From: Macrostomum lignano
Lineage: Eukaryota
DNA: 37,015 bases
Direction of reading: 5' to 3'
NCBI GenBank assembly: GCA_002269645.1
Contig: NIVC01004724.1
Location: 1 to 37,015 of the forward strand
Of this stretch, positions 5,385 to 37,015 are shown piece after piece. The first letter of the stretch is position 1. Each line of letters begins with the position of its first letter. A model generated the notes under the pieces. The model worked only from the letters and a program-made list of their open reading frames with translations. It was not told where the DNA came from and searched no databases. Position numbers and translations under genes: made by a program.

Positions 5385-5413
5385 GCTCCCCAACGGGGGG
5401 CGTAGATTGCTAG
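5385..5413 (+). other. Helitron 3' terminus: GCTCCCC-AAC-GGGGGGC hairpin, 8-nt spacer, CTAG
   Basis: 7-bp stem with one G:T pair, then GTAGATTG, then CTAG at 5410-5413. The following T belongs to the target. Confidence 0.85.
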
Positions 5414-5780: not shown

Positions 5781-5815
5781 TAACCCTAACCCTAACCCTA
5801 ACCCTAACCCTAACC
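5781..5815 (+). repeat. Interstitial telomere-like (TAACCC)5 tract
   Basis: Five perfect hexamers plus TAACC. Confidence 0.92.
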
Positions 5816-13124: not shown

Positions 13125-15319
13125 TATATACTAAAGTTGACGCGTTGTTTGTCTGTCTGTATGTCAGTTCGATAACTCCTCCTAGAATACTTGCAACTCA
13201 GCGTTGAAACTTATATGGGAAAACTGCAAATTTTCCGAGGATGGCTTTAGGCTATTTTAATCTTTCATTTTCAATTTTAAGATCCCTAAAAAAGCAGAAA
13301 ACGGCGGTCTTGACCTTTGATAATCTTAATTGTCCCCTCTTTCTGCTCGGAGCTGAAAATTGGCATAAATTTTGAGTGATTACGCCACAACTTTTTCCTA
13401 TGTCGCCAGTGCATTTTCTCTCCTGTGGGGAATGGGCGCGTTCTCATTGGCGCGTGTGTACAATTGGACCCTGGCTCACTGGCTGACTTTATAGATAATT
13501 GCGCAATGATATGGCTACTGATAAGTTTTCCTGCCTATCAATGGGCAGTCCTGTGTATTTGTTGGACATTGAAATTCAATGCATCAACTTGCAAGCAGGC
13601 AGTGAACGTACACTCGATACTTCAATGCTATAAATCAGACAGTTTCAAACGCTAACTGTTCCTCGAGTTTTAAACTTTGAGAGGAGAAACTTATATTGCT
13701 GGCAAGATCTTGCAACGCTGAGTTCGGGGATATAAGTTGTTTGCTTTAACTATGAAAAGAAAAAGCACAGCATTTGGAAAACTATTTCCATACTTTTAAC
13801 TTTTGCAAATATTGTACTCAGTTTTGCAAGACGTAATAGATAAAGTTGGGGGGAGGGTTCAACTTCTCACTGCTGCTGTGGATTGGAGGGTTGATTTAGA
13901 TTGCGCAATCTTTTGTTAACTTTACCTGAGGCTGATACTGACTGACTGTGAAATCGGTTGCGCAATGAATTGATTCAATTAGTTCAATATTTTTATCTGT
14001 GCCTTTTAACACGAAGCTGTGCGTAGTTCTAACCCTAACCCTAACCCTAACCCTAACCCTAATGAATCTGGCGAGTTGAGTTGTTTGACGGAAAAAATTC
14101 GATTAAGTCAAGTTTAGCGGAGACGATTTCAATGTTTAAATTCTGACGGAGAAGATTTCTGTTTCGTGGAGAGGATTTCGATGATGTTCAGTTTCACGAA
14201 AGGATTTCCATGGTGTTCAGTTTCACGGAGAGGATTTCGATCATGTTCAGCTTCACGGAGAGGCTTTCTGTTTCGCGGAGATAATTTATGATTGATTTCT
14301 GTTTTATGGAAACAATTTTGATGGATTCAGGTTTCAAGGAGAGGATTTCGAAGGAGTCCAGTTTCACTGAGAGGATTTCGATGGTTTTTAGTTGCACAGA
14401 CAGGATTTTTGCTTCGCGGAGAGGATCTTGATGGATTTGGCATCTTCAATCAGTCAGAGAAGAGAGTAAAGAGAAGACTGAAAAGAGAAGAGAGAAGAGA
14501 TGATAGAAAACAGAGTATAATTGAGTGGAGAGATTAGACATGACAGATTGGAGATGATAGGAGAGAGAATAGATGAGGGATAAGAGCGTACAGAGGCAAT
14601 AGAAGAGAGGGGAGAGTAGAGGAGAAAGAAAGAGTGAGATGAGGAGATGAGGGATGAGAGAGCAGGGGAGAGAGGAGACAGGAGAGAGTACAGACGAAAG
14701 ACTAGGGAGAAGATATAAATAAGGTAGTAAAGATGAGAGGAGAGAGAGGAGAGAGAAGCGAAAGGAGAAGAGAGTGAGGAGAGAGGAGAGAGATGAAAGG
14801 AGCAAGGAAAGGAGAAAAGAGAGAATGGAGAGAATAGAAAAGAGAGAAGAGAAGAGACAGGGGATAGTGAAAAGGAGGAAGAAAGATGGGAGACAAGAAA
14901 GTAGTGTCAGAGCGTATATGAAATATGAGAAATGAGAGCAGAGAGAAGAGAAAAGAGAAGAGAGAGAGAGGGTTAAGAGAGACGATAGATAAGTGAGTAG
15001 AGATGACATATGAGAGAGGAGAGAAGAGGGAGAGATAAGAGTGAAGAGAGGAGACAGAAGACAGGAGAAGGTACAGACGAAAGACGAGGAGAAGAGATAA
15101 ATAAGGGAGCAGGGGTAGAGATGAGATGAAGAGAGGAGAGAGGAGATATGAGAGACTTGAGAGTCTTTGAGCTATGGTCTTTGAAATGTTTTGTAAAGAA
15201 TTTGGAGACGATTTGGAAGATAGGGTTAAAGACATGGAATTTCAGTTGATGGATATTTCAGGGAATTTCCGGTGATGGGAGTTCTTCCCCTTTCTCCTCC
15301 GAAGGAGGAGTTCCACTCG
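13125..15319 (+). mobile_element. Array unit 3 (2195 bp), near-identical to unit 2
   Basis: Same 5' variant as unit 2; TAACCC 14030-14062. Confidence 0.6.
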
Positions 15320-17901
15320 TATATACTAAAGTTGACGTGTTGTTTGTCTGTCTGTCTGTCTGTCTGTGTGTCTGTCATTTCGACAACTCCTCCTTGAATA
15401 GTGGCAACTCAGCGTTGAAACTTATATGGGAAGATTGGAAATTATCCGAGGTCGGCTATAGGCTATTTTAATTCTGAAATTTTAATTTCTAAGATCCTCA
15501 AAAAAGCAGAAAACGGCGGTCTTGACCTTTGATAATCTTAATTGTCCCCTCTTTCTGCTTGGAGCTGAAAAATGCATGAATTTTTAGTGATTGCGCCACA
15601 ACTTTTCCCTATCTCTGTAGTGTATTTTCTTTCCAGTGGGGGGTGGGAGCGTTCTCAGTGGCTGCGTGTGTACACTTGGACCCTGGCTCACTGGCTGACT
15701 TTATAGATAATTGCGCAATGATATGGCTACTGATAAGTTTTCCTGCCTTTCAATGGGCAGTCCTGTGTATTTGTTGGACATTGAAATTCAATGCATCAAC
15801 TTGCAAGCAGGCAGTGAACGTACACTCGATACTTCAATGCTATAAATCAGACAGTTTCAAACGCTAACTGTTCCTCGAGTTTTAAACTTTGAGAGGAGAA
15901 ACTTATATTGCTGGAAAGATCTTGCAACGCTGAGCTTCGGGGATATAAGTTGTTTGCTTTAAATATGAAAAGAAAAAGCACAGCATTTGAAAAAGTATTT
16001 CCATACTTTTAACTTTCTGCAAAATTGTACTCAGTTTTGCGAGACGTAATAGATAAAGTTGGGGGGAGGGTTTAACTTCTCACTGCTGCTGTGTATTGGA
16101 GGGTTGATTTAGATTGCGCAATGTTTTTGTTAACTTTACCTGAGGCTGATACTGACTGACTGTGAAATCGGTTGCGCAATGAATTGATTCAATTAGTTCA
16201 ATATTTTTATCAGTGCCTTTTAACACGAAGCTGTGCGTAGTTTTAACCCTAACCCTAACCCTAACCAATGAATCTGGAAAGTTAAGTTGTTTGACGGAAA
16301 AAAACTGATTGAGTCCAGTTTAGCGGAGACGATTTCAATGTTTTAATTTTGACGGAGAGGATTTCTGTTTCGTGGAGAGGATTTCGATGATGTTCAGTTT
16401 CACGAAGAGAGGATTTCGATGATGTTCAGTTTCACGAAGAGAGAATTTCGATGATGTTCAGCTTCACGGAGAGGATTTCTGTTTCGCGGAGATAATTTAT
16501 AATTGATTTCTGTTTTATGGAGACCATTTTGATGGATTTAAGTTGAGAGAATGAGAGGATTTCGAAGGAGTCCAGTTTCACGGAGAGGATTTCGATGGTT
16601 TTCAGTTGCACAGACAAGATTTCTGCTTCGCGGAGAGGATCTTGATGGATTTGGCATCTTCAATCAGTCAGAGAAGAGAGTAAAGAGAAGAATAAAAAGA
16701 GAAGAGAGATGAGATGATAGAAAACAGAGTATAATTGAGTGGAGAGATTAGACATGACAGATGGGAGAGAAGAGGGGAGTAAGGCGGGAACGAAGGAGAG
16801 AGAAGAGAAGAGGAGAGAGGAGATGAGAGGGGAGATATGAGATAGAGGGAGACAAGAGAGATGATAGGAGAGAGAATAGATGAGGGATAAGAGCGTACAG
16901 AGGAAATAGAAGAGAGGGGAAGTAGAGGAGAAAGAAAGAATGAGATGAGGATGAGAGATGAGAAGGAGGGGAGAGAGAGAGAAAAGAGGAGAAAAGAGGG
17001 GAGAAAGGAGACAGGAGAGAGTAAAGACAAAGACCAGGGAGAAGATATAAATAAGGTAGTAGAGATGAGAGGAGATAGAGGACATCGAGAAGCAAGAGGA
17101 GAAGAGACAGGCGAGAGGAGAGAGATGAAGGATCAGAGATGAGAGAGTTAAGAGAGGAAAGTAGTGTGGAGAGGAGAGATGAGAGATGCGATGAGAAAGG
17201 AGATGAGAGGAGCGATGAGAAAAGAGATGAGTGAGAACATAAGAGAGAAGAGATTAGAGATTAGAGAAGAGAGGGGAGAAGATGAAAGGAGAAAGGAGAG
17301 GAGAGAAGAGAGAATGGAGAGGATAGAAAAGTGAGAAGAGAAGAGACAGGGAAAAGTGGTAAGGAGGAAAGGAAGATGGGAGACAAGAAAGTAGAGTGTG
17401 AGAGCGTATATGAGATTTGAGAAACGAGAAGCAGATAGGAGAGAAAAGAGAAGAGAGAGAGGGTTAAGAGATACGATAGATAAGTAAGGAGAGATGACAT
17501 ATGAGAAAGGAGAGAAGAGGGAGAGATAAGAGAGAAGAGAGAAGAGAGGAGACAGGAGACAGAAGTGAAGAGGAGAGATATGAGAGAAGAGAGGAGACAA
17601 GAGACAGGAGAAGGTACAAACGAAAGACGAGGGAGAAGAGATAAATAAGGGAGTAGGGGTAGAGATGAGATGAGAGAGAGGAGAGAGAAGAGAGTCACGA
17701 TAATAGCGAATAGAAGAGAGAGGAGATATGAGAGACGTGAGAGTCTTTGAGCTATGGTCTTTCAAAGGTTTTGTAAAGAATTTGGAGACGATTTGGAAGA
17801 TAGGGTTCAAGACATGGAATTTCAGTTGATGGATATTTCAGGGAATGGAATTCCGGTGATGGGAGTTCTTCCCCTTTCTCCTCCGAAGGAGGAGTTCCAC
17901 T
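15320..17901 (+). mobile_element. Array unit 4 (~2582 bp)
   Basis: One B module; TAACCC 16244-16266; long GA tract; ends CCACT. Confidence 0.6.
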
Positions 17902-20271
17902 TATATACTAAAGTTGACGTGTTGTTTGTCTGTCTGTCTGTGTGTCTGTCTGTCATTTCGACAACTCCTCCTTGAATAGTGGCAACTCAGCGTTGAAACT
18001 TATATGGGAAGATTGGAAATTATCCGAGGTCGGCTATAGGCTATTTTAATTCTGAAATTTTAATTTCTAAAATCCTCAAAAAAGCAGAAAACTGCTTTTT
18101 TGACCCCCAATGACCTTCTCTTTGCCACTCTGCCTGGGGCTTCAGCCAGTTTGTAAAAATAGCCACCCCAACCTCCGCCCGCGGGCCGCTGTGTATTGAG
18201 GGGTGGTGGGTGGCGCGTGTTCTGCGTTCAATGCAAATAAAACCCCCGCGAGTTGAGGGGTTGTCCCCTCTTTCTGCTTGGAGCTGAAAAATTTGCATGA
18301 ATTTCAAGTGATTGCGCCACAACTTTTCCCTATCTATGCAGTGTATTTTCTTTCCAGTGGGGGGTGGGAGCGTTCTCAGTGGCTGCGTGTGTACACTTGG
18401 ACCCTGGCTTACTGGCTGACTGTATAGATAATTGCGCAATGATATGGCTACTGATAAGTTTCCTGCCTTTCAATGGGCAGTCCTGTGTATTTGTTGGACA
18501 TTGAAATTCAATGCATCAACTTGCAAGCCAGGCAGTGAACGTACACTCGATACTTCAATGCTATAAATCAGACAGTTTCAAACGCTAACTGTTCCTCGAG
18601 TTTTAAACTTTGAGAGAGAGACTTAATATTGCTGGAAAGATCTTGCAACGCTGTTCGGGATATAAATTGTTTGCTTTAAATATGCAAAGAAAAAGCACAG
18701 CATTTGAAAAACTATTTCCATACTTTTAACTTTTTGCAAATATTGTACTCAGTTTTGCGAGACGAAATAGATAAAGTTGGGGGGAATTTGTTTCATTATC
18801 TGTGCCTTTTAATAGGCTGCCCTGTGTAATAGCCGCCTGTGTAATGAATGAATAAACTTGCGAGCCTCTTTGGCAGGCAGTGAACGTATACTCGATATTT
18901 CAATGCTTTAAAACGGGAACTTTCAAACGCTAACTGCTCTTCGAGTTCTAAACTTTAAGAGAAGAGACTTATACTGCTGAAAAGATCTTGCAACGCTGAG
19001 TTCGAGGATATAAATTGTTTGCTTTAAATATAAAGACTAAAAGCACAGCATACAAAAACTATTTCCATACTTTTAGCTTTCTGCAAAGATTGTACTCATT
19101 TTTAGTTCAATGCCCCCAACACCCGGGTTCAATTTCTAACTGCCACTGCGTATTGAAAAGGGGCCGGTCTCTGTGTAATTGGCTCAGCTCTAACCCTAAA
19201 CACGCAGCTGTGTGTAGCTCTAACCCTAACCTAACCCTAACAATAACCCTAACCAATGAATCCTAATATTTTATTCTTTTTGACGGAGAAAATTTCGATT
19301 GAGTCCAGTTTTAAAGAGATAATTTCGATGGTTTTCAGTTTCACGGAGAGGATTTCTGTTTCGCGGAGAGGATTTCAATGGTTTTCAGTTTCACGGAGAG
19401 GATTTCTGCTTCGCGGAGAGGATCTTGATAGATTTGGCATCTTCAATCAGTCATAAAAGAGAGTAAAGAGAAGATCGAAAAGAGAAGAGACATGAGATGG
19501 TATAAAACAGAGTAGAAATGAGTGGATAGATTAGACATGACCGATGGAAGAGAAGAGGGGAGTAAGGCGGAAACGAAGAGGGAGAGAGAAGAGAAGAGGA
19601 GAGAGGAGATGAGAGGGGAGATATGAGATAGCAGAGGGAGACAAGAGAGATAATAGGAAAGAGAATAGATGACGGATAAGAGCGTACAGAGGAAATAGAA
19701 GAGAGGGGAGAGTAGAGGAGAAAGAAAGAGTGAGATGAGGGAAGAGATATGAGAGAGGAGATATGAGAGACGTGAGAGTCTTTGAGCTATGGTCTTTGAA
19801 AGGTTTTGTAAAGAATTTGGAGAGATGATAGGAGAGAGAATAGAGATGAGGGATAAGAGCGTACAGGGGAAATAGATGAGAGGGGAGAGTAGAGAAGAAA
19901 GAAAGAGTGAGATGAAGGATGAGAGATGAGGGAGGAGAGGGGAGAGAGAAGAGAGGAGAAAAGAGGGAGAAATGAGACAGGAGAGAGTAGAGACGAAAGA
20001 CCAGGGAGAAGATATAAATAAGGGAGTAGGGGTAGAGATGAGAGGAGAGAGAGGAGAGAGAAGAGTCACGATAATAGCGAAGAGAGGAGAGAGGAGATAT
20101 GAGAGACGTGAGAGTCTTTGAGCTATGGTCTTTCAAAATTTTGTAAAGAATTTGGAGACGATTTGGAAGATGGGATTCAAGTCATGGAGTTTCAGCTGAT
20201 GGATTTCAGGGAATGGAATTCCGGTGATGGGAGTTCTTCCCCTTTCTCCTCCGAAGGAGGAGTTCCACTCG
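17902..20271 (+). mobile_element. Array unit 5 (~2370 bp) with a GC-rich insert and an internal duplication
   Basis: Insert at 18092-18260; two B modules; TAACCC 19221-19254; duplicated 3'-module fragment at 19768-19823. Confidence 0.6.
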
Positions 20272-22371
20272 TCTATATACTAAAGTTGACGCGTTGTTTG
20301 TCTGTCTGTATGTCAGTTCGATAACTCCTCCTAGAATACTTGCAACTCAGCGTTGAAACTTATATGGGAAAACTGCAAATTTTCCGAGGATGGCTTTAGG
20401 CTATTTTAATCTTTCATTTTCAATTTTAAGATCCCTAAAAAAGCAGAAAACGGCGGTCTTGACCTTTGATAATCTTAATTGTCCCTCTTTCTGCTCGGAG
20501 CTGAAAATTGCATGAATTTTAAGTGCATTGCGCCTCATTGACAATTTGGCTGACTTGGCGCAGGCTGAACGTACTGATACTTTGCTATAAATCAGTCCTG
20601 TGTATTTGTTGGACATTGAAATTCAATGCATCAACTTGCAAGCAGGCAGTGAACGTACACTCGATACTTCAATGCTATAAATCAGACAGTTTCAAACGAG
20701 AGGTTCCTCGAGTTTTAAACTTTGAGAGGAGAAACTTATATTGCTGGCAAGATCTTGCAACGCTGAGTTCGGGGATATAAGTTGTTTGCTTTAACTATGA
20801 AAAGAAAAAGCACAGCATTTGGAAAACTATTTCCATACTTTTAACTTTTTGCAAATATTGTACTCAGTTTTGCAAGACGTAATAGATAAAGTTGGGGGGA
20901 GGGTTCAACTTCTCACTACAGCTGTGGATTGGAGGGTTGATTTAGATTGCGCAATCTTTTGTTAACTTTACCTGAGGCTGATACTGACTGACTGTGAAAT
21001 CGGTTGCGCAATGAATTGATTCAATTAGTTCAATATTTTTATCTGTGCCTTTTAACACGAAGCTGTGCGTAGTTCTAACCCTAACCCTAACCCTAACCCT
21101 AATGAATCTGGCGAGTTGAGTTGTTTGACGGAAAAAATTCGATTAAGTCAAGTTTAGCGGAGACGATTTCAATGTTTAAATTCTGACGGAGAAGATTTCT
21201 GTTTCGTGGAGAGGATTTCGATGATGTTCAGTTTCACGAAAGGATTTCCATGGTGTTCAGTTTCACGGAGAGGATTTCGATCATGTTCAGCTTCACGGAG
21301 AGGCTTTCTGTTTCGCGAGATAATTTATGATTGATTTCTGTTTTATGGAAACAATTTTGATGGATTTAAGGTTTCAAGGAGAGGATTTCGAAGGAGTCCA
21401 GTTTCACTGAGAGGATTTCGATGGTTTTTAGTTGCACAGACAGGATTTTTGCTTCGCGGAGAGGATCTTGATGGATTTGGCATCTTCAATCAGTCAGAGA
21501 AGAGAGTAAAGAGAAGACTGAAAAGAGAAGAGAGAAGAGATGATAGAAAACAGAGTATAATTGAGTGGAGAGATTAGACATGACAGATTGGAGATGATAG
21601 GAGAGAGAATAGATGAGGGATAAGAGCGTACAGAGGCAATAGAAGAGAGGGGAGAGTAGAGGAGAAAGAAAGAGTGAGATGAGGAGATGAGGAGATGAGG
21701 GATGAGAGAGGAGGGAGAGAGGAGACAGGAGAGAGTACAGACGAAAGACTAGGGAGAAGATATAAATAAGGTAGTAAAGATGAGAGGAGAGAGAGGAGAG
21801 AGAAGCGAAAGGAGAAGAGAGTGAGGAGAGAGGAGAGAGATGAAAGGAGCAAGGAAAGGAGAAAAGAGAGAATGGAGAGAATAGAAAAGAGAGAAGAGAA
21901 GAGACAGGGGATAGTGAAAAGGAGGAAGAAAGATGGGAGACAAGAAAGTAGTGTCAGAGCGTATATGAAATATGAGAAATGAGAGCAGAGAGAAGAGAAA
22001 AGAGAAGAGAGAGAGAGGGTTAAGAGAGACGATAGATAAGTGAGTAGAGATGACATATGAGAGAGGAGAGAAGAGGGAGAGATAAGAGTGAAGAGAGGAG
22101 ACAGAAGACAGGAGAAGGTACAGACGAAAGACGAGGGAGAAGAGATAAATAAGGGAGCAGGGGTAGAGATGAGATGAAGAGAGGAGAGAGGAGATATGAG
22201 AGACTTGAGAGTCTTTGAGCTATGGTCTTTGAAAGATTTTGTAAAGAATTTGGAGACGATTTGGAAGATAGGGTTAAAGACATGGAATTTCAGTTGATGG
22301 ATATTTCAGGGAATAGAATTCCGGTGATGGGAGTTCTTCCCCTTTCTCCTCCGAAGGAGGAGTTCCACTCG
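20272..22371 (+). mobile_element. Array unit 6 (2100 bp)
   Basis: Starts TCTATATACTAAAG; module A scrambled or deleted at 20525-20595; TAACCC 21076-21102. Confidence 0.6.
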
Positions 22372-25135
22372 TATATACTAAAGTTGACGTGTTGTTTGTC
22401 TGTCTGTCTGTGTGTGTCTGTCATTTCGACAACTCCTCCTTGAATAGTGGCAACTCAGCGTTGAAACTTATATGGGAAGATTGGAAATTATCCGAGGTCG
22501 GCTATAGGCTATTTTAATTCTGAAATTTTAATTTCTAAATCCTCAAAAAAGCAGAAAACGGCGGTCTTGACCTTTGATAATCTTAATTGTCCCCTCTTTC
22601 TGCTTGGAGCTGAAAATTTGCATGAATTTCAAGTGATTGCGCCACAACTTTTCCCTATCTCTGCAGTGTATTTTCTCTCCAGTGGGGGGATGGGGCGTTC
22701 TAAATGGCTGCCTGTGTACAATCGGACCCTGGCTCACTGGCTGACTGTATAGACAATTGCGCAAAGATTTGTGTTCTAATTTTCAATAGGCAATTTTGTT
22801 GAACGTTGAAATTCAATGCATAAACTTGCGGGCCTCTTTAGCAGGCAGTGAACGTACAATCGATATTTCAATGCTTTAAATCAGAAAGTTTCAAACGCAA
22901 ACTGTTGCTCGAGTTTTTAACTTTGAGAGAAAAAATTTATATTGCTGGAAAGAACTTGCAAAGCTGATTTCAGGGATATAAATTGTTTGCTTCAAATATG
23001 AAAACTAAAAGCTCTGCATTGCAAAAACTATTTCCATACTTTAAACTTTCTGCAAAGATTGTACTCATTTTGGCGAGAGGTGAGAGATAAAGTTGGGGGT
23101 TTCGACTTCCAACTGGCGCTGTGTATAGGAAGGGGGTCAGTTGCTTTGTATTGGAGGGTTGATTTAGATTGCGCAATGTTTTTGTTAACTTTAACTGAGA
23201 CTGATACTGACTGACTGTGAAATCGGTTGCGCAATGAATTGATTCAATTAGTTCAATAGTTTATCAGTGCCTTTTAACACGAAGCTGTGCGTAGTTCTAA
23301 CCCTAACCCTAACCCTAACCAATGAATCCGGAGAGTTGAGTTGTTTGACGGAAAAAATTGATTGAGTCCAGTTTAGCGGAGACGATTTCAATGTTTTAAT
23401 TTTGACAAAGAGGATTTCTGTTTCGTGGAGAGGATTTCGATGGTGCTCAGTTTCACGGAGAGGATTTTGATGATGTTCAGCTTCACGGAGAGGATTTCTG
23501 TTTCGCGGAGTTAAATTTATGATTGATTTCTGCTTTATGGAGACGATTTTGATAGATTTAAGTTTCAAGGAGAGGATTTCGAAGGTGTTCAGTTTCACGG
23601 AGAGGATTTCGAAGGTGTTCAGTTTCACGGAGAGGATTTCGATGATGTTCAGCTTCACGGAGAGGATTTCTGTTTCGCGGAGATAATTTATGATTGATTT
23701 CTGTTTTATGGAGACGATTTTGATGGATTTAAGTTTCAAGGAGAGGATTTCGAAGGAGTCCAGTTTCACGGAGAGGATTTCGATGGTTTTCAGTTGCACG
23801 GACAGGATTTCTGCTTCGCGGAGAGGATCTTGATGGATTTGGCATCTTCAATCAGTCAGAGAAGAGAGTAAAGAGAAGAATGAAAAGAGAAGAGAGATGA
23901 GATGATAGAAAACAGAGTAGAAATGAGTGGAGAGATTAGACATGACAGATGGGAGAGAAGAGGAAAGTAAGGCGGGAACGAAGGAGAGAGAAGAGAAGAG
24001 GAGAGAGGAGATGAAGGGAGAGGATATGAGAGAGGAGATATGAGATTGCAGAGAGGAGACAGGATGGAGAAGAAAGGAGGGACAAGAGCGTACAGAGGCA
24101 ATAGAAGAGAGGAAAGAGAGGAGAGAGGTGAGAGGTGAGAGGAGAGAGATGAAAGATCAGAGATCAGAGATTTAAGAGAAGAAAGTAGTGAGGAGAAAGA
24201 AGAGGGTAAAGATGAGAGTGCAGAGAGGAGAGAAACGAGAGGAGACAGGTGGTAGAAAGGAGTGTAAAAACAGCAGATAAGAAAGGGGAGGGTGAGAGTG
24301 AGAGCATATAGGAAAGTGTAAAAGGGGAGCAGAGGAGAGAGAATATATAAGTGAGTAGAGAAGAGATATGAGAGAGGAAAGACGAGGGGAGAGAGGAGAC
24401 AGGAGAGAGTAAATTTGAAAGACCTGGGAGAAGAGATAAAAAAGATAGTACAGATGAGAGGAGAGAGAGAGAGGAGAGATGAGAGATGCAATGAGAAAAG
24501 AGATGAGTGAGAAAATAAGAGAGAGAAGAGATTAGAGATTAGAGAAGAGATGAGGGGAGATGAGAGTAGAGAAGAGAGAATGGAGAGGAGAGAAAAGAGA
24601 AGAGAGGAGACAGGTGATGCAGTAGAAAGGAGGGAAGAAAGATGGGAGATAAGAAAGGAGAGGGTGAGAGCGTATAAGAGATACGAGAAATGAGAGCAGA
24701 GAGAAGAGAGAAAAAAGAAGAGAGAAAGTAGAGCGGAGACGATAGATAAGTGATTAGAGATTAGATATGAGAGAGGAGAGAAAAGGGGAGAGATAAGATA
24801 GAAGATAGGAGAGTAGACAGGATAGGGTACAGACGAAAGACGAGGGAGAAGAGATAAATAAGGGAGTAGAGATAAATAAGAGAGTAGGGGTAGAGATGAG
24901 ATGAGAGAGAGGAGAGAGAAGCGAGTCACGATAATAGCGAAGAGAGGAGAGAGTAGATATGAGAGACGTAAGAGTCTTTGAGCTATGGTCTTTGAAATAT
25001 TTTGTAAAGAATTTGGAGACGATTTGGAAGATAGGGTTAAAGACATGGAATTTCAGTTGATGGATATTTCAGGGAATAGAATTCCGGTGATGGGAGTTCT
25101 TCCGGCTTTCTCCTCCGAAGGAGGAGTTCCACTCG
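22372..25135 (+). mobile_element. Array unit 7 (2764 bp)
   Basis: TAACCC 23298-23320; minisatellite block expanded by a ~172-bp duplication (starts 23481 and 23653); long GA tract. Confidence 0.6.
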
Positions 25136-26781
25136 TCTATCTATATATACTAAAGTTGACGCGTTGTTTGTCTGTCTGTCTGTGTGTCTGTCTGTCATTT
25201 CGACAACTCCTCCTTGAATAGTGCCAACTCAGCGTTGAAACTTATATGGGAAGATTGGAAATTATCCGAGGTCGGCTATAGGCTATTTTAATTCTGAAAT
25301 TTTAATTTCTAAGATCCTCAAAAAAGCAGAAAACGGCGGTCTTGACCTTTGATAATCTTAATTGTACCCTCTTTCTGCTTGGAGCTGAAAATTTGCATGA
25401 ATTTCAAGTGATTGCGCCACAACTTTTCCCTATCTCTGCAGTGTATTTTCTCTCCAGTGGGGGGATGGGGCGTTCTAAATGGCTGCCTGTGTACAATCGG
25501 ACCCTGGCTCACTGGCTGACTGTATAGACAATTGCGCAAAGATTTGTGTTCTAATTTTCAATAGGCAGCCCTGTGATTTTGTTGAACCTTGAAATTCAAT
25601 GCATAAACTTGCGGGCCTCTTTAGCAGGCAGTGAACGTACAATTGATATTTCAATGCTTTAAATCAGAAAGTTTCAAACGCAAACTGTTGCTCGAGTTTT
25701 TAACTTTGAGAGAAAAAATTATATTGCTGGAAAGAACTTGCAAAGCTGATTTCAGGGATATAAATTGTTTGCTTTAAATATGAAAAGAAAAAGCACAGCA
25801 TTGAAAAAACTATTTCCATACTTTTAACTTTCTGCAAAAATTGTACTCAGTTTTGCGAGACGTAATAGATAAAGTTGGGGGGAGAGTTCAACTTCTCACT
25901 GCTGCTGTGTATTGGAGGGTTGATTTAGATTGCGCAATGTTTTTCTTAACTTTACCTGAGGCTGATACTGACTGACTGTGAAATCGGTTGCGCAATGAAT
26001 TGATTCAATTAGTTCAATATTTTTATCAGTGCCTTTTAACACGAAGCTGTGCGCAGTTCTAACCCTAACCCTAACCCTAACCCTAACCAATGAATCCGGA
26101 GAGTTGAGTTGTTTGACGGCAAAGAAATTCGATTGAGTCCAGTTTAGCGGAGACGATTTCAATGTTTTAATTTTGACGGAGAGGATTTCTGTTTCGTGGA
26201 GAGGATTTCGATGGTGTTCAGTTTCACGGAGAGGATTTCGATGATGTTCAGCTTCACGGAGAGGATTTCTGTTTCGCGGAGATAATTAATGATTGATTTC
26301 TGTTTTATGGAGACGATTTTGATGAATTTAAGTTTCAATGAGAGGATTTCGAAGGAGTCCAGTTTCACGGAGAGGATTTCGATGGTTTTCAGTTGCACGG
26401 ACAGGATTTCTGCTTCGCGGAGAGGATCTTGATGGATTTGGCATCTTCAATCAGTCAGAGAAGAGAGTAAAGAGAAGAATGAAAAGAGAAGAGAGATGAG
26501 ATGATAGAAAACAGAGTAGAAATGAGTGGAGAGATTAATAAGGGAGTAGGGGCAGAGATGAGATGAGAGAGAGGAGAGAGAAGAGAGTCACGATAATAGC
26601 GAATAGAAGAGAGAGGAGATATGAGAGACGTGAGAGTCTTTGAGCTATGGTCTTTGAAAGGTTTTGTAAAGAGTTTGGAGACGATCTGGAAGATAGGGTT
26701 CAAGACATGGAATTTCAGCTGATGGATTTCAGGGAATGGAATTCCGGTGATGGGAGTTCTTCGAAGGAGGAGTTCCACTCG
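25136..26781 (+). mobile_element. Array unit 8 (1646 bp, deleted derivative)
   Basis: TAACCC 26060-26088; most of the GA tract deleted at ~26535; left arm of the 3' hairpin deleted at 26762/26763. Confidence 0.6.
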
Positions 26782-29472
26782 TCTATATATACTAAAGTTG
26801 ACGCGTTGTTTGTCTGTCTGTCTGTCTGTCATTTCGACAACTCCTCCTTGAATAGTGCCAACTCAGCGTTGAAACTTATATGGGAAGATTGGAAATTATC
26901 CGAGGTCGGCTATAGGCTATTTTAATTCTGAAATTTTAATTTCTAAGATCCTCAAAAAAGCAGAAAACGGCGGTCTTGACCTTTGATAATCTTAATTGTC
27001 CCCTCTTTCTGCTTGGAGCTGAAAATCTGCATGAATTTTAAGTGATTGCGCCATAAAATTTTGCTAACTTGGCAGTGTTTTTTCTCTCCAGTGGGGGATA
27101 GGAGCGTTCTCAGTGGCGGCGTGTGTACACTTGGACCCTAGCTAACTGGCGGACAGTGAAATTCAATGCATCAATTTGCGAGCCTCTCTAGCAGGCAGTG
27201 AACGTACACTCGATATTTCAATGCTTTAAATCAGAAAGTTTCAAATGCTAACTGTTGCTCGATTTTTGAACTTTGAGAGGAGAGACTTATATTGCTGGAA
27301 AGATCTTGCAACGCTGAGTTCAGGGATATAAGTTGTTTGCTTTAACTGTAAAAATTAAAAGCACAGCATTCAAAAAACGATTTTATTACTTTTACTTTTA
27401 ACTTGCTGCAAAGATTGTACTTATTTTTGCGATAGGTCAGAGATAAATTTGGGGGGTTCAATTGCTAATTGCCACTGCGTAGTGGAAGGCGGTCGGGCGC
27501 TGTGTATTGGAGGGTTGATTTAGATTGCGCAATGTTTTTCTTAACTTTAACTGAGACTGATACTGACTGACTGTGAAATCGGTTGCGCCATCAATTTGTT
27601 TTATTATCTGTGCCTTTCAATAGGCTGCCCTGTGTAATAGCCAGCCTGTGTAATGAATGAATAAATTTGCGAGCCTCTTTGGAAGGCAGTGAACGTACAG
27701 GCGATATTTCAATGCCTTAAAACGGGAACTTTCAAACGCTAACTGCTCTTCGAGTTCTAAACTTTAAGAGAAGATACTTATACTGCTGAAAAGATCTTGC
27801 AACGCTGAGTTCGAGGATATAAATTGTTTGCTATAAATGTAAAGACTAAAAGAGCAGCATCAAAAAAACTATTTCCATACTTTTAGCTTTATGCAAAGAT
27901 TGTACTCATTTTTTGGTTCAATGCCCCCAACAGTTCGGCGTTCAATTTCTAACTGCTACTGCGTATTGAAAAGAGGTCGGTCTCTGTGTACTGGAGGGTT
28001 GATTTAGATTGCGCAATCTTTTTGTTAACTTTAACTGAGACTGATACTGACTGACTGAGAAATCGGTTGCGCAATCAATTGATTCAATTGGTTCAATTTT
28101 TATTTGAACACGCAGCTGTGTAGCTTTAACCCTAACCCTAACCCTAACAATAACCCTAACCAATGAATCCTGATATTTATTTTTTTTGACGGAGAAAATT
28201 TCGATTGAGTCCAGTTTAAAAGAGAGAATTTCGATGGTTTTCAGTTGCACGGACAGGATTTCTGCTTCGCGGAGAGGATCTTGATGGATTTGGCATCTTC
28301 AATCAGTCAGAGAAAAGAGTAAAGAGAAGAATGAAAGCAGAAGAGAGATGAGATGATAGAAAACAGAGTAGAAATAAGTGGAGATATTAGACATGACAGA
28401 TTGGAGAGAAGAGGGGATTTAGGCGGGAACGAAGAGGGAGAGAGTAGAAAAGAGGAGAGAGGAGAGAAAATAGATTAGGGATAAGAGCGTACAGAGAAAA
28501 TAGAAGAGAGGGGAGAGTAGAGGAGAAAGAAAGAGTGAGATGAGGGGATGAGGGATGAGAGAGGAGGGGAGACAGGAGAGACAAGAAAGGAGAAAAGAGG
28601 GGAGAAAGGAGAAAGGAGAGAGTAGAGACGAAGGACCAGTTAGAAGATATAAATACGGTAGTAGAGATGAGAGGAGAGATAGGAGAGAGAAGCGAGAGAA
28701 GAAGCGAGAGGAGAAGAGAAAGAGGAGAGAGGAGAGAGATGAAATAGATAAGAGAGTTAAGAGAGGAAAGTAGTGAGGAGAGGAGAGATGAGAGATGCGA
28801 TAAAAAGAGATGAGTGAGAACATAAGAGAGAAGAGAGAAGAGATTAGAGAAGAGAGGGGAGAAGATAAAAGGAGCAAGGGGAGGAGAAAAGAGAGAATGG
28901 AGAGGATAGAAAAGAGAGAAGAGAAGAGACAGGGAAAAGTGGAAAGGAGGAAAGAAAGATTGGAGACAAGTAAGTGGAGTGTGAGAGCGTATATGAGATA
29001 TGAGAAATGAGAGCAGAGAGGAAAGAAAAGAGAAGAGAGAGAGGGTTAAGAGAGACGATAGATAAGTGAATAGGGATGACATATAAAAGAGGAGAGAAGA
29101 GGGAGAGATAAGAGAGAAGAGAGAAGACAGGAGACAGAAGTGAAGAGGAGAGATATGAGAGAAGAGAGGAGACAAGAGACAGGAGAGGGTACAGACGAAA
29201 GACGAGGGATAAAACATAAATAAGGGAGTACGGGTAGAGATGAGATGAGAGAGAGGAGAGAGAAGAGAGTCACGATAATAGCGAATAGAAGAGAGAGGAG
29301 ATATGAGAGACGTGAGAGTCTTTGAGCTATGGTCTTTCAAAGATTTTGTAAAGAATTTGGAGACGATTTGGAAGATGGGATTCAAGTGGAGTTTCAGCTG
29401 ATGGATTTCAGGGAATGGAATTCCGGTGATGGGAGTTCTTCCCCTTTCTCCTCCGAAGGAGGAGTTCCACTC
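26782..29472 (+). mobile_element. Array unit 9 (~2691 bp)
   Basis: Starts TCTATATATACTAAAG; two diverged B modules; TAACCC 28127-28161. Confidence 0.6.
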
Positions 29473-32158
29473 TCTATCTCTATCTATCTATCTATATATA
29501 CTAAAGTTGACGTGTTGTTTGTCTGTCTGTCTGTGTGTCTGTCTGTCATTTCGACAACTCCTCCTTGAATAGTGCCAACTCAGCGTTGAAACTTATATGG
29601 GAAGATTGGAAATTATCCGAGGTCGGCTATAGGCTATTTTAATTCTGAAATTTTAATTTCTAAGATCCTCAAAAAAGCAGAAAACGGCGGTCTTGACCTT
29701 TGATAATCTTAATTGTCCCCTCTTTCTGCTTGGAGCTGAAAATTTGCATGAATTTCAAGTGATTGCGCCACAACTTTTCCCTATCTCTGCAGTGTATTTT
29801 CTCTCCAGTGGGGGGATGGGGCGTTCTAAATGGCTGCCTGTGTACAATCGGACCCTGGCTCACTGGCTGACTGTATAGACAATTGCGCAAAGATTTGTGT
29901 TCTAATTTTCAATAGGCAGCCCTGTGATTTTGTTGAACCTTGAAATTCAATGCATAAACTTGCGGGCCTCTTTAGCAGGCAGTGAACGTACAATCGATAT
30001 TTCAATGCTTTAAATCAGAAAGTTTCAAACGCAAACTGTTGCTCAAGTTTTTAACTTTGAGAGAAAAAATTTATATTGCTGGAAAGAACTTGCAAAGCTG
30101 ATTTCAGGGATATAAATTGTTTGCTTCAAATATGAAAACTAAAAGCTCTGCATTGCAAAAACTATTTCCATACTTTAAACTTTCTGCAAAGATTGTACTC
30201 ATTTTGGCGAGAGGTGAGAGATAAAGTTGGGGGTTTCGACTTCTAACTGGCGCTGTGTATAGGAAGGGGGTCAGTTGCTTTGTATTGGAGGGTTGATTAG
30301 ATTGCGCAAACTTTTTGTTAACTTTAACTGAGACTTATACTGACTAACACAGAAATATATTGCGCAATCAATTGATTCAATTGGTTCACTTTTTTATTAT
30401 CGGCCCTGTGTATTAGCTTGGCAGTGAAATTCAATGTACAAAATTGCGAGCCTCTCAGGCAAGCAGTCGGGAAATCGGTAAATTTCAAACGCTAACTGCT
30501 CCTTGAGTTTTAAACTTTGAGAGGAGAAACTTATATTGCTGGAAAGATCTTGCAACGCTGAGTTTAGGGATATAAGTTGTTTGCTTTAAATATGAAAAGA
30601 AAAAGCACCGCATTTAAAAAACTATTTCCATACTTTTAACTTTCTGCAAAAATTGTACTCAGTTTTGCGAGACGTAATAGATAAAGTTGGGGGAGGGTTC
30701 AACTTCTCACTGCTGCTGTGTATTGGAGGGTTGATTTAGATTGCGCAATGTTTTTGTTAACTTTAACTGAGACTGATACTGACTGACTGTGAAATCGGTT
30801 GCGCAATGATTTGATTCAATTAATTCAATATTTTTATCAGTGCCTTTTAACACGAAGCTGTGCGTAGTTCTAACCCTAACCCTAACCCTAACCCTAATGA
30901 ATCTGGCGAGTTGAGTTGTTTGACGGAAAAAATTCGATTAAGTCAAGTTTAGCGGAGACGATTTCAATGCTTAAATTCTGACGGAGAAGATTTCTGTTTC
31001 GTGGAGAGGATTTCGATGATGTTCAGTTTCACGAAAGGATTTCCATGGTGTTCAGTTTCACGGAGAGGATTTCGATCATGTTCAGCTTCACGGAGAGGCT
31101 TTCTGTTTCGCTGAGATAATTTATGATTGATTTCTGTTTTATGGAAACAATTTTGATGGATTCAGGTTTCAAGGAGAGGATTTCGAAGGAGTCCAGTTTC
31201 ACTGAGAGGATTTCAATGGTTTTTAGTTGCACAGACAGGATTTTTGCTTCGCGGAGAGGATCTTGATGGATTTGGCATCTTCAATCAGTCAGAGAAGAGA
31301 GTAAAGAGAAGACTGAAAAGAGAAGAGAGAAGAGATGATAGAAAACAGAGTATAATTGAGTGGAGAGATTAGACATGACAGATTGGAGATGATAGGAGAG
31401 AGAATAGATGAGGGATAAGAGCGTACAGAGGCAATAGAAGAGAGGGGAGAGTAGAGGAGAAAGAAAGAGTGAGATGAGGAGATGAGGGATGAGAGAGCAG
31501 GGGAGAGAGGAGACAGGAGAGAGTACAGACGAAAGACTAGGGAGAAGATATAAATAAGGTAGTAAAGATGAGAGGAGAGAGAGGAGAGAGAAGCGAAAGG
31601 AGAAGAGAGTGAGGAGAGAGGAGAGAGATGAAAGGAGCAAGGAAAGGAGAAAAGAGAGAATGGAGAGAATAGAAAGAGAGAAGAGAAGAGACAGGGGATA
31701 GTGAAAAGGAGGAAGAAAGATGTGAGACAAGAAAGTAGTGTCAGAGCGTATATGAAATATGAGAAATGAGAGCAGACAGAAGAGAAAAGAGAAGAGAGAG
31801 AGAGGATTAAAGAGACGATAGATAAGTGAGTAGAGATGACATATGAGAGAGGAGAGAAGAGGGAGAGATAAGAGTGAAGAGAGGAGACAGAAGACAGGAG
31901 AAGGTACAGACGAAAGACGAGGGAGAAGAGATAAATAAGGGAGCAGGGGTAGAGATGAGATGAGAGAGAGGAGAGAGGAGATATGAGAGACTTGAGAGTC
32001 TTTGAGCTATGGTCTTTGAAAGATTTTGTAAAGAATTTGGAGACGATTTGGAAGATAGGGTTAAAGACATGGAATTTCAGTTGATGGATATTTCAGGGAA
32101 TAGAATTCCGGTGATGGGAGTTCTTCCCCTTTCTCCTCCGAAGGAGGAGTTCCACTCG
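29473..32158 (+). mobile_element. Array unit 10 (~2686 bp)
   Basis: Starts with an expanded TCTA microsatellite; two B modules; TAACCC 30871-30897. Confidence 0.6.
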
Positions 32159-34614
32159 TATATACTAAAGTTGACGCGTTGTTTGTCTGTCTGTATGTCT
32201 GTCTGTATGTCTGTCTGTATGTCTGTCTGTCATTTCGACAACTCCTCCTTGAATAGTGCCAACTCAGCGTTGAAACTTATATGGGAAGATTGGAAATTAT
32301 CCGAGGTCGGCTATAGGCTATTTTAATTCTGAAATTTTAATTTCTAAGATCCTCAAAAAGCAGAAAACGGCGGTCTTGACCTTTGATAATCTTAATTGTC
32401 CCCTCTTTCTGCTTGGAGCTGAAAATTTGCATGAATTTCAAGTGATTGCGCCACAACTTTTCCCTATCTCTGCAGTGTATTTTCTCTCCAGTGGGGGGAT
32501 GGGGCGTTCTAAATGGCTGCCTGTGTACAATCGGACCCTGGCTCACTGGCTGACTGTATAGACAATTGCGCAAAGATTTGTGTTCTAATTTTCAATAGGC
32601 AGCCCTGTGATTTTGTTGAACCTTGAAATTCAATGCATAAACTTGCGGGCCTCTTTAGCAGGCAGTGAACGTACAATCGATACTTCAATGCTATAAATCA
32701 GACAGTTTCAAACGCTAACTGTTCCTCGAGTTTTAAACTTTGAAAGAAGAGACTTATATTGCTGGAAAGATCTTGGAACGCTGAGTTCGGGATATAAATT
32801 GTTTGCTTTAAATATGAAAAGAAAAAGCACAGCATTTGAAAAACTATTTCCATACTTTTAACTTTTTGCAAATATTGTACTCAGTTTTGCGAGACGAAAT
32901 AGATAAAGTTGGGGGAGGGTTCAACTTCTCACTACTGCTGTGGATTGGAGGGTTGATTTATATTGCGCAATGTTTTTGTTAACTTTAACTGAGACTGATA
33001 ATGACTGACTGTGAAATCGGTTGCGACATCAATTTGTTTCATTATCTGTGCCTTTTAATAGGCTGCCCCGTGTAATAGCCGGCCTGTGTAATGAATGAAT
33101 AAACTTGCGAGCCTCTTTGGCAGGCAGTGAACGTACACTCGATATTTCAATGCTTTAAAACGGGAACTTTCAAACGCTAACTGCTCTTCGAGTTCTAAAC
33201 TTTAAGAGAAGAGACTTATACTGCTGAAAAGATCTTGCAACGCTGAGTTCGAGGATATAAATTGTTTGCTTTAAATATAAAGACTAAAAGCACAGCATAC
33301 AAAAACTATTTCCATACTTTTAGCTTTCTGCAAAGATTGTACTCATTTTTAGTTCAATGCCCCCAACACCCGGGTTCAATTTCTAACTGCCACTGCGTAT
33401 TGAAAAGGGGCCGGGCTCTGTGTACTGGAGGGTTGATTTAAATTGCGCAATCTTTTTGTTCACTTTACCTGAGACTGATACTGACTGACTTTGAAATCGG
33501 TTGCGCAATCAATTGATTCAATTGGCTCAATTTTTTATTTAAACACGCAGCTGTGTGTAGCTCTAACCCTAACCCTAACCCTAACAATAACCCTAACCAA
33601 TGAATCCTAATATTTTATTCTTTTTGACGGAGAAAATTTCGATTGAGTCCAGTTTTAAAGAGATAATTTCAATGGTTTTCAGTTTCACGGAGAGGATTTC
33701 TGTTTTGCGGAGAGGATTTCAATGGTTTTCAGTTTCACGGAGAGGATTTCTGCTTCGCGGAGAGGATCTTGATAGATTTGGCATCTTCAATCAGTCATAA
33801 AAGAGAGTAAAGAGAAAGATCAAAAAGAGAAGAGACATGAGATGGTATAAAACAGAGTAGAAATGAGTGGATAGATTAGACATGACCGATGGAAGAGAAG
33901 AGGGGAGTAAGGCGGAAACGAAGAGGGAGAGAGAAGAGAGAGGAGAGAGGAGATGAGAGGGGAGATATGAGATAGCAGAGGGAGACAAGAGAGATAATAG
34001 AAAAGAGAATAGATGACGATAAGAGCGTACAGAGGAAATAGAAGAGAGGGGAGAGTAGAGGAGAAAGAAAGAGTGAGATGAGGGAAGAGATATGAGAGAG
34101 GAGATATGAGAGACGTGAGAGTCTTTGAGCTATGGTCTTTGAAAAGGTTTTGTAAAGAATTTGGAGAGATGATAGGAGAGAGAATAGAGATGAGGGATAA
34201 GAGCGTACAGGGGAAATAGATGAGAGGGGAGAGTAGAGAAGAAAGAAAGAGTGAGATGAAGGATGAGAGATGAGGAGAGAGGGGAGAGAGAAGAGAGGAG
34301 AAAAGAGGGGAGAAATGAGACAGGAGAGAGTAGAGACGAAAGACCAGGGAGAAGATATAAATAAGGGAGTAGGGGTAGAGATGAGATGAGAGAGAGAGAG
34401 AAGAGAGTCACGATAATAGCGAAGAGAGGAGAGAGGAGATATGAGAGACGTAAGAGTCTTTGAGCTATGGTCTTTCAAAGGTTTTGTAAAGAATTTGGAG
34501 ACGATTTGGAAGATGGGATTCAAGTCATGGAGTTTCAGCTGATGGATTTCAGGGAATGGAATTCCGGTGATGGGAGTTCTTCCCCTTTCTCTCCTCCGAA
34601 GGAGGAGTTCCACT
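32159..34614 (+). mobile_element. Array unit 11 (~2456 bp)
   Basis: Two B modules; TAACCC 33564-33598; same internal duplication as unit 5 at 34110-34167. Confidence 0.6.
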
Positions 34615-36936: not shown

Positions 36937-37015
36937 TATATACTAAAGTTGACGCGTTGTTTGTCTGTCTGTCTGTGTGTCTGTCTGTTCATTTCGACAA
37001 CTCCTCCTTGAATAG
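36937..37015 (+). repeat. Start of the next unit (array continues past the window)
   Basis: TATATACTAAAGTTGACGCG...GACAACTCCTCCTTGAATAG. Confidence 0.9.

What the first reader, a model, noticed from the sequence alone, without database searches (positions are those of the whole stretch)
22346..22441. Conserved inverted repeat that can compete with the 3' hairpin across each junction (possible anti-terminator switch)
Seen: the hairpin's right arm lies within AAGGAGGAGTT (22354-22364), the exact reverse complement of AACTCCTCCTT (22431-22441) just after the TCTG microsatellite of the next unit. The divergent 5' variant keeps 10 bp of this pairing (13108-13117 with 13174-13183) although its flanks differ. 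In single-stranded DNA spanning a junction, this 10-11 bp helix excludes the 7-bp hairpin and loops out the CTCG|TC junction. Inference: this could suppress termination in tandem or circular forms and favour concatemers. Alternative: the two motifs are asymmetric subterminal inverted repeats of the Helitron2/Helentron type, read on the minus strand.
Basis: partly seen in the sequence, partly recalled or inferred. Interest (0 to 1): 0.7.

Follow-up and report, generated by a model that had tools for sequence, protein, structure and literature searches.

The report
Inverted repeat spanning Helitron array junctions
An 11-base inverted repeat bridges every head-to-tail junction in this array of Helitron-type transposon copies and could compete with the 3' hairpin, but the copies available give no evidence that it is under selection or stops termination.

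Summary
AAGGAGGAGTT, which contains the descending arm of the 3' hairpin CTCCTCC-GAA-GGAGGAG, is complementary to AACTCCTCCT[T/A] lying 56-89 nt downstream. This is true at all 13 unit junctions in the window, with 9 perfect copies. A match this long between one 3' end and one 5' end is unlikely by chance (about 6e-4). A solo nested insertion of a related element at 2202-5413 (TC...hairpin...CTAG, between T|T, no target duplication) shows the units are + strand Helitron-like non-autonomous elements. It also fixes the junction position and rejects the minus-strand reading.

The two folds exclude each other and are almost equal in energy (-6.3 against -6.4 to -6.8 kcal/mol). The anti-terminator reading is not supported:
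- No compensatory changes occur.
- The arms are no more conserved than their flanks.
- The competing arm lies 3' of the hairpin, so it becomes single-stranded only after the termination point.
- The C-GAA-G loop is probably more stable than the model assumes.
- The related element lacks any such repeat and still inserted cleanly.

My best reading is a family-specific subterminal inverted repeat, akin to those of Helitron2, DINE-1 and Hel-2, but placed unusually so that it overlaps the 3' hairpin. A neutral coincidence is almost as likely. No copies outside the window could be found.

The parts
22346..22362 (+). 3' (RTS) hairpin: CTCCTCC, GAA, GGAGGAG. It has a 7-bp stem and a C-GAA-G triloop, and ends 9 nt before the unit end.
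   Evidence: It is the only perfect GC-rich hairpin followed by CTNR-T found on either strand, and it recurs at the junctions.
22354..22364 (+). 3' copy of the inverted repeat, AAGGAGGAGTT. It comprises two loop bases, the descending hairpin arm and TT.
   Evidence: 13 copies, 11 exact.
22365..22371 (+). 3' terminal tail CCACTCG. The end is CTCG, not the canonical CTRR.
   Evidence: The tail is shortened to CCACT at j17886 and j34599, and to CCACTC at j29456.
22372..22389 (+). 5' (LTS) terminus TATATACTAAAGTTGACG. Other junctions carry TC or (TCTA)n in front of it. It is the best conserved block, with 1 of 31 columns variable.
   Evidence: It is homologous to the proven 5' terminus of the solo element at 2202.
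22398..22422 (+). (TGTC)n/(TG)n microsatellite inside the LTS. It sets the variable spacing between the two arms.
   Evidence: gap 56-89 nt.
22431..22441 (+). 5' copy of the inverted repeat, AACTCCTCCTT, lying 60-70 nt inside the LTS.
   Evidence: The last base is A in LTS variant B.
22446..22456 (+). Second LTS segment, AGTGGCAACTC, complementary with one bulge to GAGTTCCACT (22360-22369). It is specific to one LTS subtype.
   Evidence: part of the minimum free energy fold.
8698..37015 (+). Head-to-tail array of 12 full units of 1.6-2.8 kb plus the start of a 13th, with 13 RTS-LTS junctions. The LTS and RTS subtypes are combined as a mosaic.
2202..5413 (+). Solo nested insertion of a related non-autonomous Helitron ('Hel-B'). 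It runs 5'-TCCTATATACTAAA...GCTCCCC-AAC-GGGGGGC-N8-CTAG-3', lies between T|T, and has no target-site duplication.
   Evidence: The joined flanks match three uninterrupted paralogous sites at 94-97% identity.

Best explanation
Interval 22346-22441 is the junction between the 3' end (RTS) of one non-autonomous Helitron-like element and the 5' end (LTS) of the next, read on the + strand. The 11-bp repeat is most likely a subterminal inverted repeat specific to this family. One copy sits 60-90 nt inside the LTS. The other copy is the descending arm of the RTS hairpin plus two bases on each side.

Shown: the sequence, its recurrence, its improbability by chance, the element ends and strand, the mutual exclusivity of the two folds, and their near-equal energies.

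Inferred: in the displaced + strand the LTS copy can pair with the RTS copy. This is the kind of LTS-RTS pairing proposed for Helitron2, DINE-1 and Hel-2 elements, where it is thought to mark or juxtapose the ends. Here the RTS copy is also half of the hairpin, so this pairing can only form at the hairpin's expense. The hairpin forms first and is at least as stable. Any effect on termination should therefore be weak and late, a modulation rather than a switch. The repeat is not required for transposition by this transposase group.
For: - An exact 11-mer complement between RTS (45 nt) and LTS (200 nt) arose in 3/5000 shuffles. Its edges are sharp, with no extended direct or inverted homology.
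- Both motifs occur on the + strand essentially only at junctions.
- Strand and ends are fixed by the solo element at 2202-5413, which has empty paralogous sites and a shared LTS terminus plus (TGTC)n.
- The architecture matches elements known to carry subterminal inverted repeats: a GTCY-type microsatellite in the 5' block, central tandem repeats, no ORFs, a 3' stem-loop and a T|T target. Compare DINE-1 (PMC2374699) and lepidopteran Hel-2, which has TC/CTAG ends, SIRs and (CTGT)n (PMC4344730).
- Bao and Jurka proposed that ATIR pairing competes with a terminal hairpin and sets the endpoint (PMC3627910).
- In FoHeli1/2 the repeat is itself part of GAA-looped hairpins (PMC5148889).
- Energies are -6.3 (local) against -6.4 to -6.8 kcal/mol (long range).
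Against: - No compensatory change exists, and 9 of 11 pairs never vary, so the alignment carries little information.
- The arms are no more conserved than the flanks. Between the two LTS lineages, which are about 10% diverged, the arm shows 1 change in 11 positions.
- Hel-B has no LTS complement to its hairpin; its best match is an unrelated 7-mer.
- The 5' copy is not at the terminus, and the spacing varies from 56 to 89 nt.
- Copies with a damaged arm (j8680) or a deleted left hairpin arm (j26764) persist in the array.
- The finding was selected post hoc from a 37-kb scan, which inflates the apparent significance.
- No copy outside the window was found.
Confidence: 0.4

Rival explanations
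1. Neutral coincidence or by-product. The founder element happened to carry an 11-mer in its LTS complementary to its RTS hairpin arm, or acquired it by some non-selected rearrangement. Every copy inherited it as the array grew, and it has no role.
For: All 13 copies are paralogues with only two LTS lineages. There is no covariation and no excess conservation. Hel-B transposed cleanly without any such repeat. The feature was picked post hoc from a long repetitive window.
Against: The chance of so long a complement in this specific RTS-LTS comparison is about 6e-4. Four of the 11 pairs extend beyond the 7-bp hairpin core. The motifs are otherwise absent from the + strand. No extended duplication accounts for it.
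Confidence: 0.33
2. The downstream LTS arm acts as a selected anti-terminator. By sequestering the descending arm of the RTS hairpin across the junction, it suppresses termination in tandem or circular forms and so favours concatemers.
For: The two folds exclude each other. When the downstream arm is included, the centroid fold becomes the long-range helix. The hairpin is the terminator in Helraiser, and its loss raises read-through (PMC4778049). Anecdotally, the family with the repeat is in an array of at least 13 units while the relative without it is solo.
Against: The competitor lies 3' of the hairpin. Behind a 5'->3' helicase it is still duplex when the cleavage site emerges, so the hairpin forms first (inference from PMC4778049 and PMC5876387). 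The energies are equal at best, and the model omits the stability of the C-GAA-G triloop. There is no covariation. The units are mosaic and heterogeneous, with LTS 80-100% and RTS 77-100% identical and lengths of 1.6-2.8 kb. This points to a long history of unequal exchange rather than one concatemer.
Confidence: 0.12
3. Iteron-like protein-binding sites in duplex DNA. The short motif GGAGTT(C)/(C)AACTC occurs twice in the RTS and twice, inverted, in the LTS, flanking the nick site. It would be a recognition repeat for the transposase or a host factor, and base-pairing between the copies would be irrelevant.
For: 25 of 27 GGAGTTC and all 22 CAACTC on the + strand lie at junctions, two per end. 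Rolling-circle replicons commonly have repeated Rep-binding motifs beside the origin hairpin (general knowledge).
Against: The common core is only 5-6 nt. This is again a single ancestral arrangement. Hel-B shares the LTS terminus but not these motifs. No protein is known.
Confidence: 0.1
4. Helitron2/Helentron-type asymmetric terminal inverted repeats read on the minus strand.
For: On the minus strand the order is: repeat, spacer, then a hairpin whose first arm is the other repeat copy. This superficially resembles a Helitron2 3'-ATIR followed by a 5' hairpin across a junction (PMC3627910, PMC5148889).
Against: The solo element shows 5'-TC...hairpin-N8-CTAG-3' on the + strand, with a T|T target. 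The GTCY microsatellite lies in the 5' block and the stem-loop near the 3' end only in the + orientation. On the minus strand no stem-loop follows the right repeat (one search shows only a 3-4 bp GTC/GAC stem). No repeat involves the true terminus.
Confidence: 0.03

Closest known systems
Helitron2 asymmetric terminal inverted repeats (Bao & Jurka 2013, PMC3627910)
   Same: A short (8-15 bp) repeat links the 5' and 3' end regions. One copy is also an arm of a terminal hairpin, so the long-range pairing and the hairpin exclude each other. The authors proposed that this competition sets the rolling-circle endpoint.
   Different: [quoted passage not shown] Here the shared copy is the 3' hairpin's descending arm and the 5' copy lies 60-90 nt inside the LTS. 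Compensatory changes were reported there and none are seen here.
DINE-1 / Helentron-associated non-autonomous elements (Yang & Barbash 2008, PMC2374699)
   Same: No ORFs, a GTCY-type microsatellite in the 5' block, a variable central tandem-repeat region, a 3' stem-loop with a 7-11 nt stem, T|T insertion (shown here for Hel-B), and tandem expansions.
   Different: DINE-1 has 13-bp subTIRs with the 5' copy terminal and the 3' copy a few nt upstream of the stem-loop, and it has no TC/CTRR ends. Here no repeat touches the terminus and Hel-B has TC...CTAG ends.
Lepidopteran Hel-2 Helitrons (Coates 2015, PMC4344730)
   Same: 5'-TC(C) and 3'-CTAG termini, a 3' stem-loop, predicted subterminal inverted repeats, and a (CTGT)n microsatellite near the 5' end.
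   Different: In Hel-2 the microsatellite lies downstream of the 5' repeat, whereas here it lies upstream. Hel-2 has A/T flanks. Sequence homology was not tested. The internal TTAGGG-type repeats here argue against a lepidopteran source.
FoHeli1/FoHeli2 of Fusarium oxysporum (PMC5148889)
   Same: Stem-GAA-stem hairpins whose arm is also one copy of a 12-bp inverted repeat between the two ends.
   Different: In FoHeli the GAA hairpin is at the 5' terminus, the partner lies in a second hairpin 38-51 bp from the 3' end, and the ends are TCAG...ATTTT.
Helraiser/Helibat RTS hairpin (PMC4778049, PMC5876387)
   Same: A palindrome about 10 nt before the 3' end on the transposed + strand. It acts as the terminator, and tandem arrays and precise RTS-LTS junctions are known.
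   Different: No LTS complement of the hairpin is described for Helraiser. Its end is CTAG, not CTCG.
Bacterial transcription attenuators (terminator/anti-terminator alternatives)
   Same: Three segments in which the middle one can pair with either neighbour.
   Different: In attenuators the competitor lies upstream and forms first. Here it lies downstream of the terminator, and the molecule is DNA behind a helicase.

Membership tests
Canonical Helitron (Helitron1/HLE1) | 5'-TC terminus | tested here: met
   Hel-B starts TCC at 2202. Array units start TC(TA)n at 7 of 13 junctions and TATATAC at 6.
Canonical Helitron (Helitron1/HLE1) | 3'-CTRR terminus | tested here: not met
   Array units end CTCG, or CCACT/CCACTC in 3 copies. 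Hel-B does end CTAG.
Canonical Helitron (Helitron1/HLE1) | Short hairpin about 10-12 nt from the 3' end | tested here: met
   The array stem ends 9 nt before the end. In Hel-B it ends 12 nt before the end.
Canonical Helitron (Helitron1/HLE1) | Insertion between A and T, no target-site duplication | tested here: inconclusive
   Hel-B has no duplication, but its target is T|T, not A|T. The array has no host flank in the window.
Canonical Helitron (Helitron1/HLE1) | RepHel-encoding autonomous partner of the HLE1 clade | not testable with these tools
   The window holds no coding sequence beyond low-complexity ORFs. All external searches were empty.
Helitron2 / Helentron (HLE2), including DINE-1 | 5' inverted repeat 0-2 bp from the 5' end, forming a 5' hairpin | tested here: not met
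   The terminal 35 nt of the LTS have no complement (10-mers, up to 2 mismatches) in the last 200 nt of the RTS for the array. Hel-B has only one weak hit.
Helitron2 / Helentron (HLE2), including DINE-1 | 3' inverted repeat upstream of, and separate from, the 3' hairpin | tested here: not met
   The 3' copy, 22354-22364, overlaps the hairpin's descending arm, 22356-22362.
Helitron2 / Helentron (HLE2), including DINE-1 | Insertion in TT, 3' stem-loop, GTCY microsatellite and central repeats (DINE-1 hallmarks) | tested here: met
   T|T target for Hel-B, stem-loop, (TGTC)n plus 30-bp minisatellite and GA-rich repeats.
Functional paired element (structure maintained by selection) | Compensatory changes, or conservation above the flanks | tested here: not met
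   No pairs change on both sides and 9/11 are invariant. Variable columns are 2/22 against 50/255, p=0.39. Power is low, with only two LTS lineages.
Attenuator-type anti-terminator switch | Competitor available before or while the terminator folds | tested here: not met
   The competitor lies 56-89 nt 3' of the hairpin. Folding up to 22425 gives only the local hairpin.

The most novel reading that the evidence does not exclude
A Helitron family carries a cis-encoded anti-terminator. Its LTS arm sequesters the descending arm of the RTS terminator hairpin across RTS-LTS junctions, or via its own tethered LTS. This lowers termination by design, so the family makes concatemers and seeds satellite-like arrays. 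It would be a built-in route from transposon to tandem repeat.
Probability: 0.1. Interest if true: 0.7.

Novelty: new variant of a known kind. Interest (0 to 1): 0.3.

Why it matters
How Helitrons end a round of rolling-circle transposition, and why some families form long tandem arrays, is understood only from the Helraiser hairpin experiments. If this repeat were functional, a repeat that shares an arm with the terminator hairpin would give a simple, mutable handle on termination efficiency. It would also link Helitron1-type ends with the subterminal repeats of Helitron2/Helentron elements. As the data stand, it is a well-documented sequence feature of one family in one array, with no evidence of selection.

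Tried and rejected
External copies for a covariation test. All searches failed:
- Exact-pattern scans of metagenome contigs, twice, viral contigs and bacterial/archaeal genomes returned nothing.
- Look-ups of two window ORFs returned nothing.
- A protein search with the 73-aa ORF that spans the junction returned nothing.
- The 17-mer LTS terminus hit 29 phage contigs, almost all in one conserved coding context; none shows any Helitron feature.

Other negative results:
- Rfam and tRNA scans were empty.
- Origin of the LTS arm as a decayed direct copy of the hairpin: only the 7-mer aligns, and 23% of shuffles score as high.
- A degenerate arm at 30494 is an unrelated one-mismatch match.
- The minus-strand Helitron2 reading is rejected on orientation evidence.
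- Overall fold stability of the junction is not above shuffled controls (z -0.41 and -0.05), so there is no global structure signal.
- The source organism could not be identified from the literature.
Full report
What is in the sequence.

The interval 22346-22441 reads CTCCTCC-GAA-GGAGGAG-TT-CCACTCG | TATATACTAAAGTTGACG...(TGTC)n...TCATTTCGAC-AACTCCTCCTT. AAGGAGGAGTT (22354-22364) and AACTCCTCCTT (22431-22441) are exact reverse complements. The first contains the descending arm of a 7-bp hairpin with a 3-nt loop.

A search for the 11-mer with up to one mismatch finds 27 sites, against 2.8 expected. Twenty-six of them form 13 ordered pairs, the first copy on the + strand and the second on the - strand. 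Nine pairs are perfect. Three have AACTCCTCCTA, giving 10 bp; these are LTS variant B at 10904, 13107 and 20254. j8680 has a G>T change in the shared arm and j36919 an A>G change at arm position 1.

On the + strand CTCCTCC occurs 25 times, and all 25 are these arms. GGAGGAG occurs only 14 times despite the GA-rich composition. The gap between arms ranges from 56 to 89 nt, because of a (TCTA)n run at the junction and the (TGTC)n run.

What the surrounding sequence is.

From 8698 to the window's end there is a head-to-tail array of non-coding units of 1.6-2.8 kb. Each unit carries a (CTAACC)n block, a 30-bp minisatellite and a long GA-rich tract. Positions 1-8697 hold rearranged unit fragments without junctions.

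The decisive context is a second element that I call Hel-B, at 2202-5413. It begins TCCTATATACTAAA and ends with an imperfect hairpin, GCTCCCC-AAC-GGGGGGC, followed by 8 nt and CTAG. When its flanks are joined they align without interruption to three paralogous unit sites at 94-97% identity. The insertion falls exactly between T and T, with no duplication or loss.

This is a textbook Helitron insertion signature. Hel-B shares the TATATACTAAA terminus and the following (TGTC)n run with the array units. That fixes the array units' 5' end, the position of the junction, and the + strand as the element strand.

The array unit therefore has:
- a Helitron-type 3' hairpin 9 nt from its end;
- a non-canonical CTCG end;
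- a 5' T(C)TATATAC start.

Its overall layout resembles DINE-1 (PMC2374699) and lepidopteran Hel-2 (PMC4344730). The shared features are a GTCY microsatellite in the 5' block, central tandem repeats, no ORFs, a 3' stem-loop, and a T|T target for the relative.

Is the repeat more than chance?

I compared the last 45 nt of a unit with 5000 shuffles of the next 200 nt. An exact complement of 11 nt or more appeared 3 times, and the typical longest match was 5-6 nt. The repeat has sharp edges. The direct similarity between the hairpin region and the LTS arm region is only the 7-mer, which is not significant.

So it is unlikely to be a pure coincidence for this one comparison. Two caveats apply. The finding was picked post hoc from a 37-kb scan. 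The 13 copies are paralogues of one ancestor and count as one event.

Is it maintained by selection?

There are only two LTS lineages, A and B, about 10% apart. Between them the right arm has 1 change in 11 positions, which is the background rate. Variable columns number 2/22 in the arms against 50/255 in the non-microsatellite flanks (Fisher p=0.39). The strongly conserved block is the LTS terminus, with 1/31 columns variable.

Formal pair counting gives no pairs with changes on both sides. Nine of 11 pairs never vary and the rest break. The same holds for the local hairpin. One copy, j26764, has lost the hairpin's left arm altogether.

Hel-B serves as a natural comparison. It has no LTS segment complementary to its own hairpin arm. 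Its best match is an unrelated 7-mer and it has no 10-mer with two or fewer mismatches involving the hairpin. It nevertheless inserted cleanly. The repeat is therefore not a requirement of this group of elements.

Can it compete with the hairpin?

With DNA parameters the local hairpin alone scores -6.3 kcal/mol and the long-range helix alone -6.4 to -6.8 kcal/mol. In junction-spanning ssDNA the modelled probability of the long helix is 0.15-0.85, depending on the spacer. Truncating before the downstream arm gives only the local hairpin. Including the arm makes the long helix the centroid. Overall fold energy is not above shuffled controls.

The parameter set treats all triloops alike. From the literature as I recall it, C-GAA-G DNA triloops are unusually stable. 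A bonus of 1-2 kcal/mol would put the local hairpin at 0.7-0.96 in a two-state estimate.

Kinetics also favour the hairpin. Helraiser work shows that the + strand is the active strand, that the helicase runs 5'->3', and that the hairpin acts as terminator (PMC4778049, PMC5876387). The downstream arm is still duplex when the hairpin and the cleavage site emerge. It can act only after read-through has already happened. The element's own LTS arm is single-stranded earlier, but it lies about 2 kb away. By my estimate the extra loop cost is roughly 3-4 kcal/mol unless the transposase tethers the 5' end nearby.

Interpretation.

The closest precedent is the Helitron2 ATIR arrangement. There one repeat copy is also a hairpin arm, and the competition was proposed to define the endpoint (PMC3627910). 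FoHeli1/2 even use stem-GAA-stem hairpins (PMC5148889).

The present case differs. The shared copy is the 3' hairpin arm, the 5' copy is internal, and no repeat touches the true terminus. The Helitron2 definition is therefore not met. The canonical Helitron definition fails on CTRR, and on the A|T target for Hel-B.

I place about 0.4 on a real family-specific subterminal repeat that pairs LTS with RTS and at most modulates the terminator. For that last reading, GGAGTTC occurs twice in the RTS and CAACTC twice in the LTS, and both motifs are otherwise nearly absent from the + strand. The minus-strand reading is essentially excluded.

The array itself looks old and reshuffled. Its LTS and RTS subtypes are combined as a mosaic and its unit lengths are unequal. 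It does not look like a fresh concatemer.

Limits.

No copy outside the window could be retrieved from any collection.

Noticed in passing
window 2202-5413: A solo nested non-autonomous Helitron ('Hel-B') with TC...hairpin-N8-CTAG ends. It lies precisely between T|T inside an array-unit fragment, with no target duplication, and three uninterrupted paralogous sites are still present in the window.
   Followed up: yes
window 2818-4283: A 23-bp satellite (AGAAGCGTCATGTAAAAAATCAT, about 64 copies, 86% match) carried inside Hel-B.
   Followed up: no
window 661, 5780, 9626, 11829, 14029, 21075, 26059, 30870 etc. (CTAACC)n; 5115-5192 (TTAGGG)n: Most array units and unit fragments contain a short C-strand telomere-type hexamer run; TRF listed none in, for example, the 22372 and 15320 units. 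Hel-B carries the same repeat in the opposite orientation, with some TTAGG/CTAGGG variants. This suggests a subtelomeric or telomere-capturing Helitron family in a host with TTAGGG telomeres.
   Followed up: no
window 4455-4510, 4925-4985, 5355-5413: Three RTS-like modules inside Hel-B, about 450 bp apart, each with a different G/C-rich hairpin stem. The middle one folds far better than shuffles (z -4.6). They may be serial 3' ends from read-through or internal duplication.
   Followed up: partly
junctions at 17902, 34615, 29474: The junction sequence is heterogeneous. The 3' tail is CCACT at two junctions and CCACTC at one, instead of CCACTCG. The 5' start carries 0-6 TCTA-type units. This could reflect imprecise end joining or microsatellite slippage.
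   Followed up: partly
window 26749-26775: Copy j26764 has a deletion that removes the left arm of the 3' hairpin, while the shared arm and the downstream arm remain intact. In this copy only the long-range helix can form.
   Followed up: partly
window 22310-22322: A second small palindrome, GGAAT-AGA-ATTCC (GGA loop in other copies), lies about 35 nt upstream of the 3' hairpin. It also has a GNA-type triloop and is lost in copy j15302.
   Followed up: no
window 22329-22340, 22358-22364, 22430-22435 and 22451-22456: GGAGTTC occurs twice in each 3' end, and CAACTC twice in each 5' end (once in the three variant-B copies, where the first reads TAACTC). Together they account for 25/27 and 22/22 of all + strand occurrences in 37 kb. 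This is an iteron-like arrangement around the junction.
   Followed up: partly
window 18093-18262: In the unit starting at 17902, a segment of about 28 nt in the LTS region is replaced by about 170 nt of GC-rich sequence that is absent from all other units.
   Followed up: no
units starting 26786, 29495, 32159, 34619, 17902: These units carry an internal tandem duplication of roughly unit positions 444-880. Adjacent units also combine different LTS and RTS subtypes, indicating unequal exchange or conversion within the array.
   Followed up: partly
L001-L029 (IMG/VR contigs): The 17-mer TATATACTAAAGTTGAC recurs in 29 phage contigs, in all but one within a single conserved coding context (FVELYTKVD...). 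They are unrelated to the Helitron terminus.
   Followed up: yes
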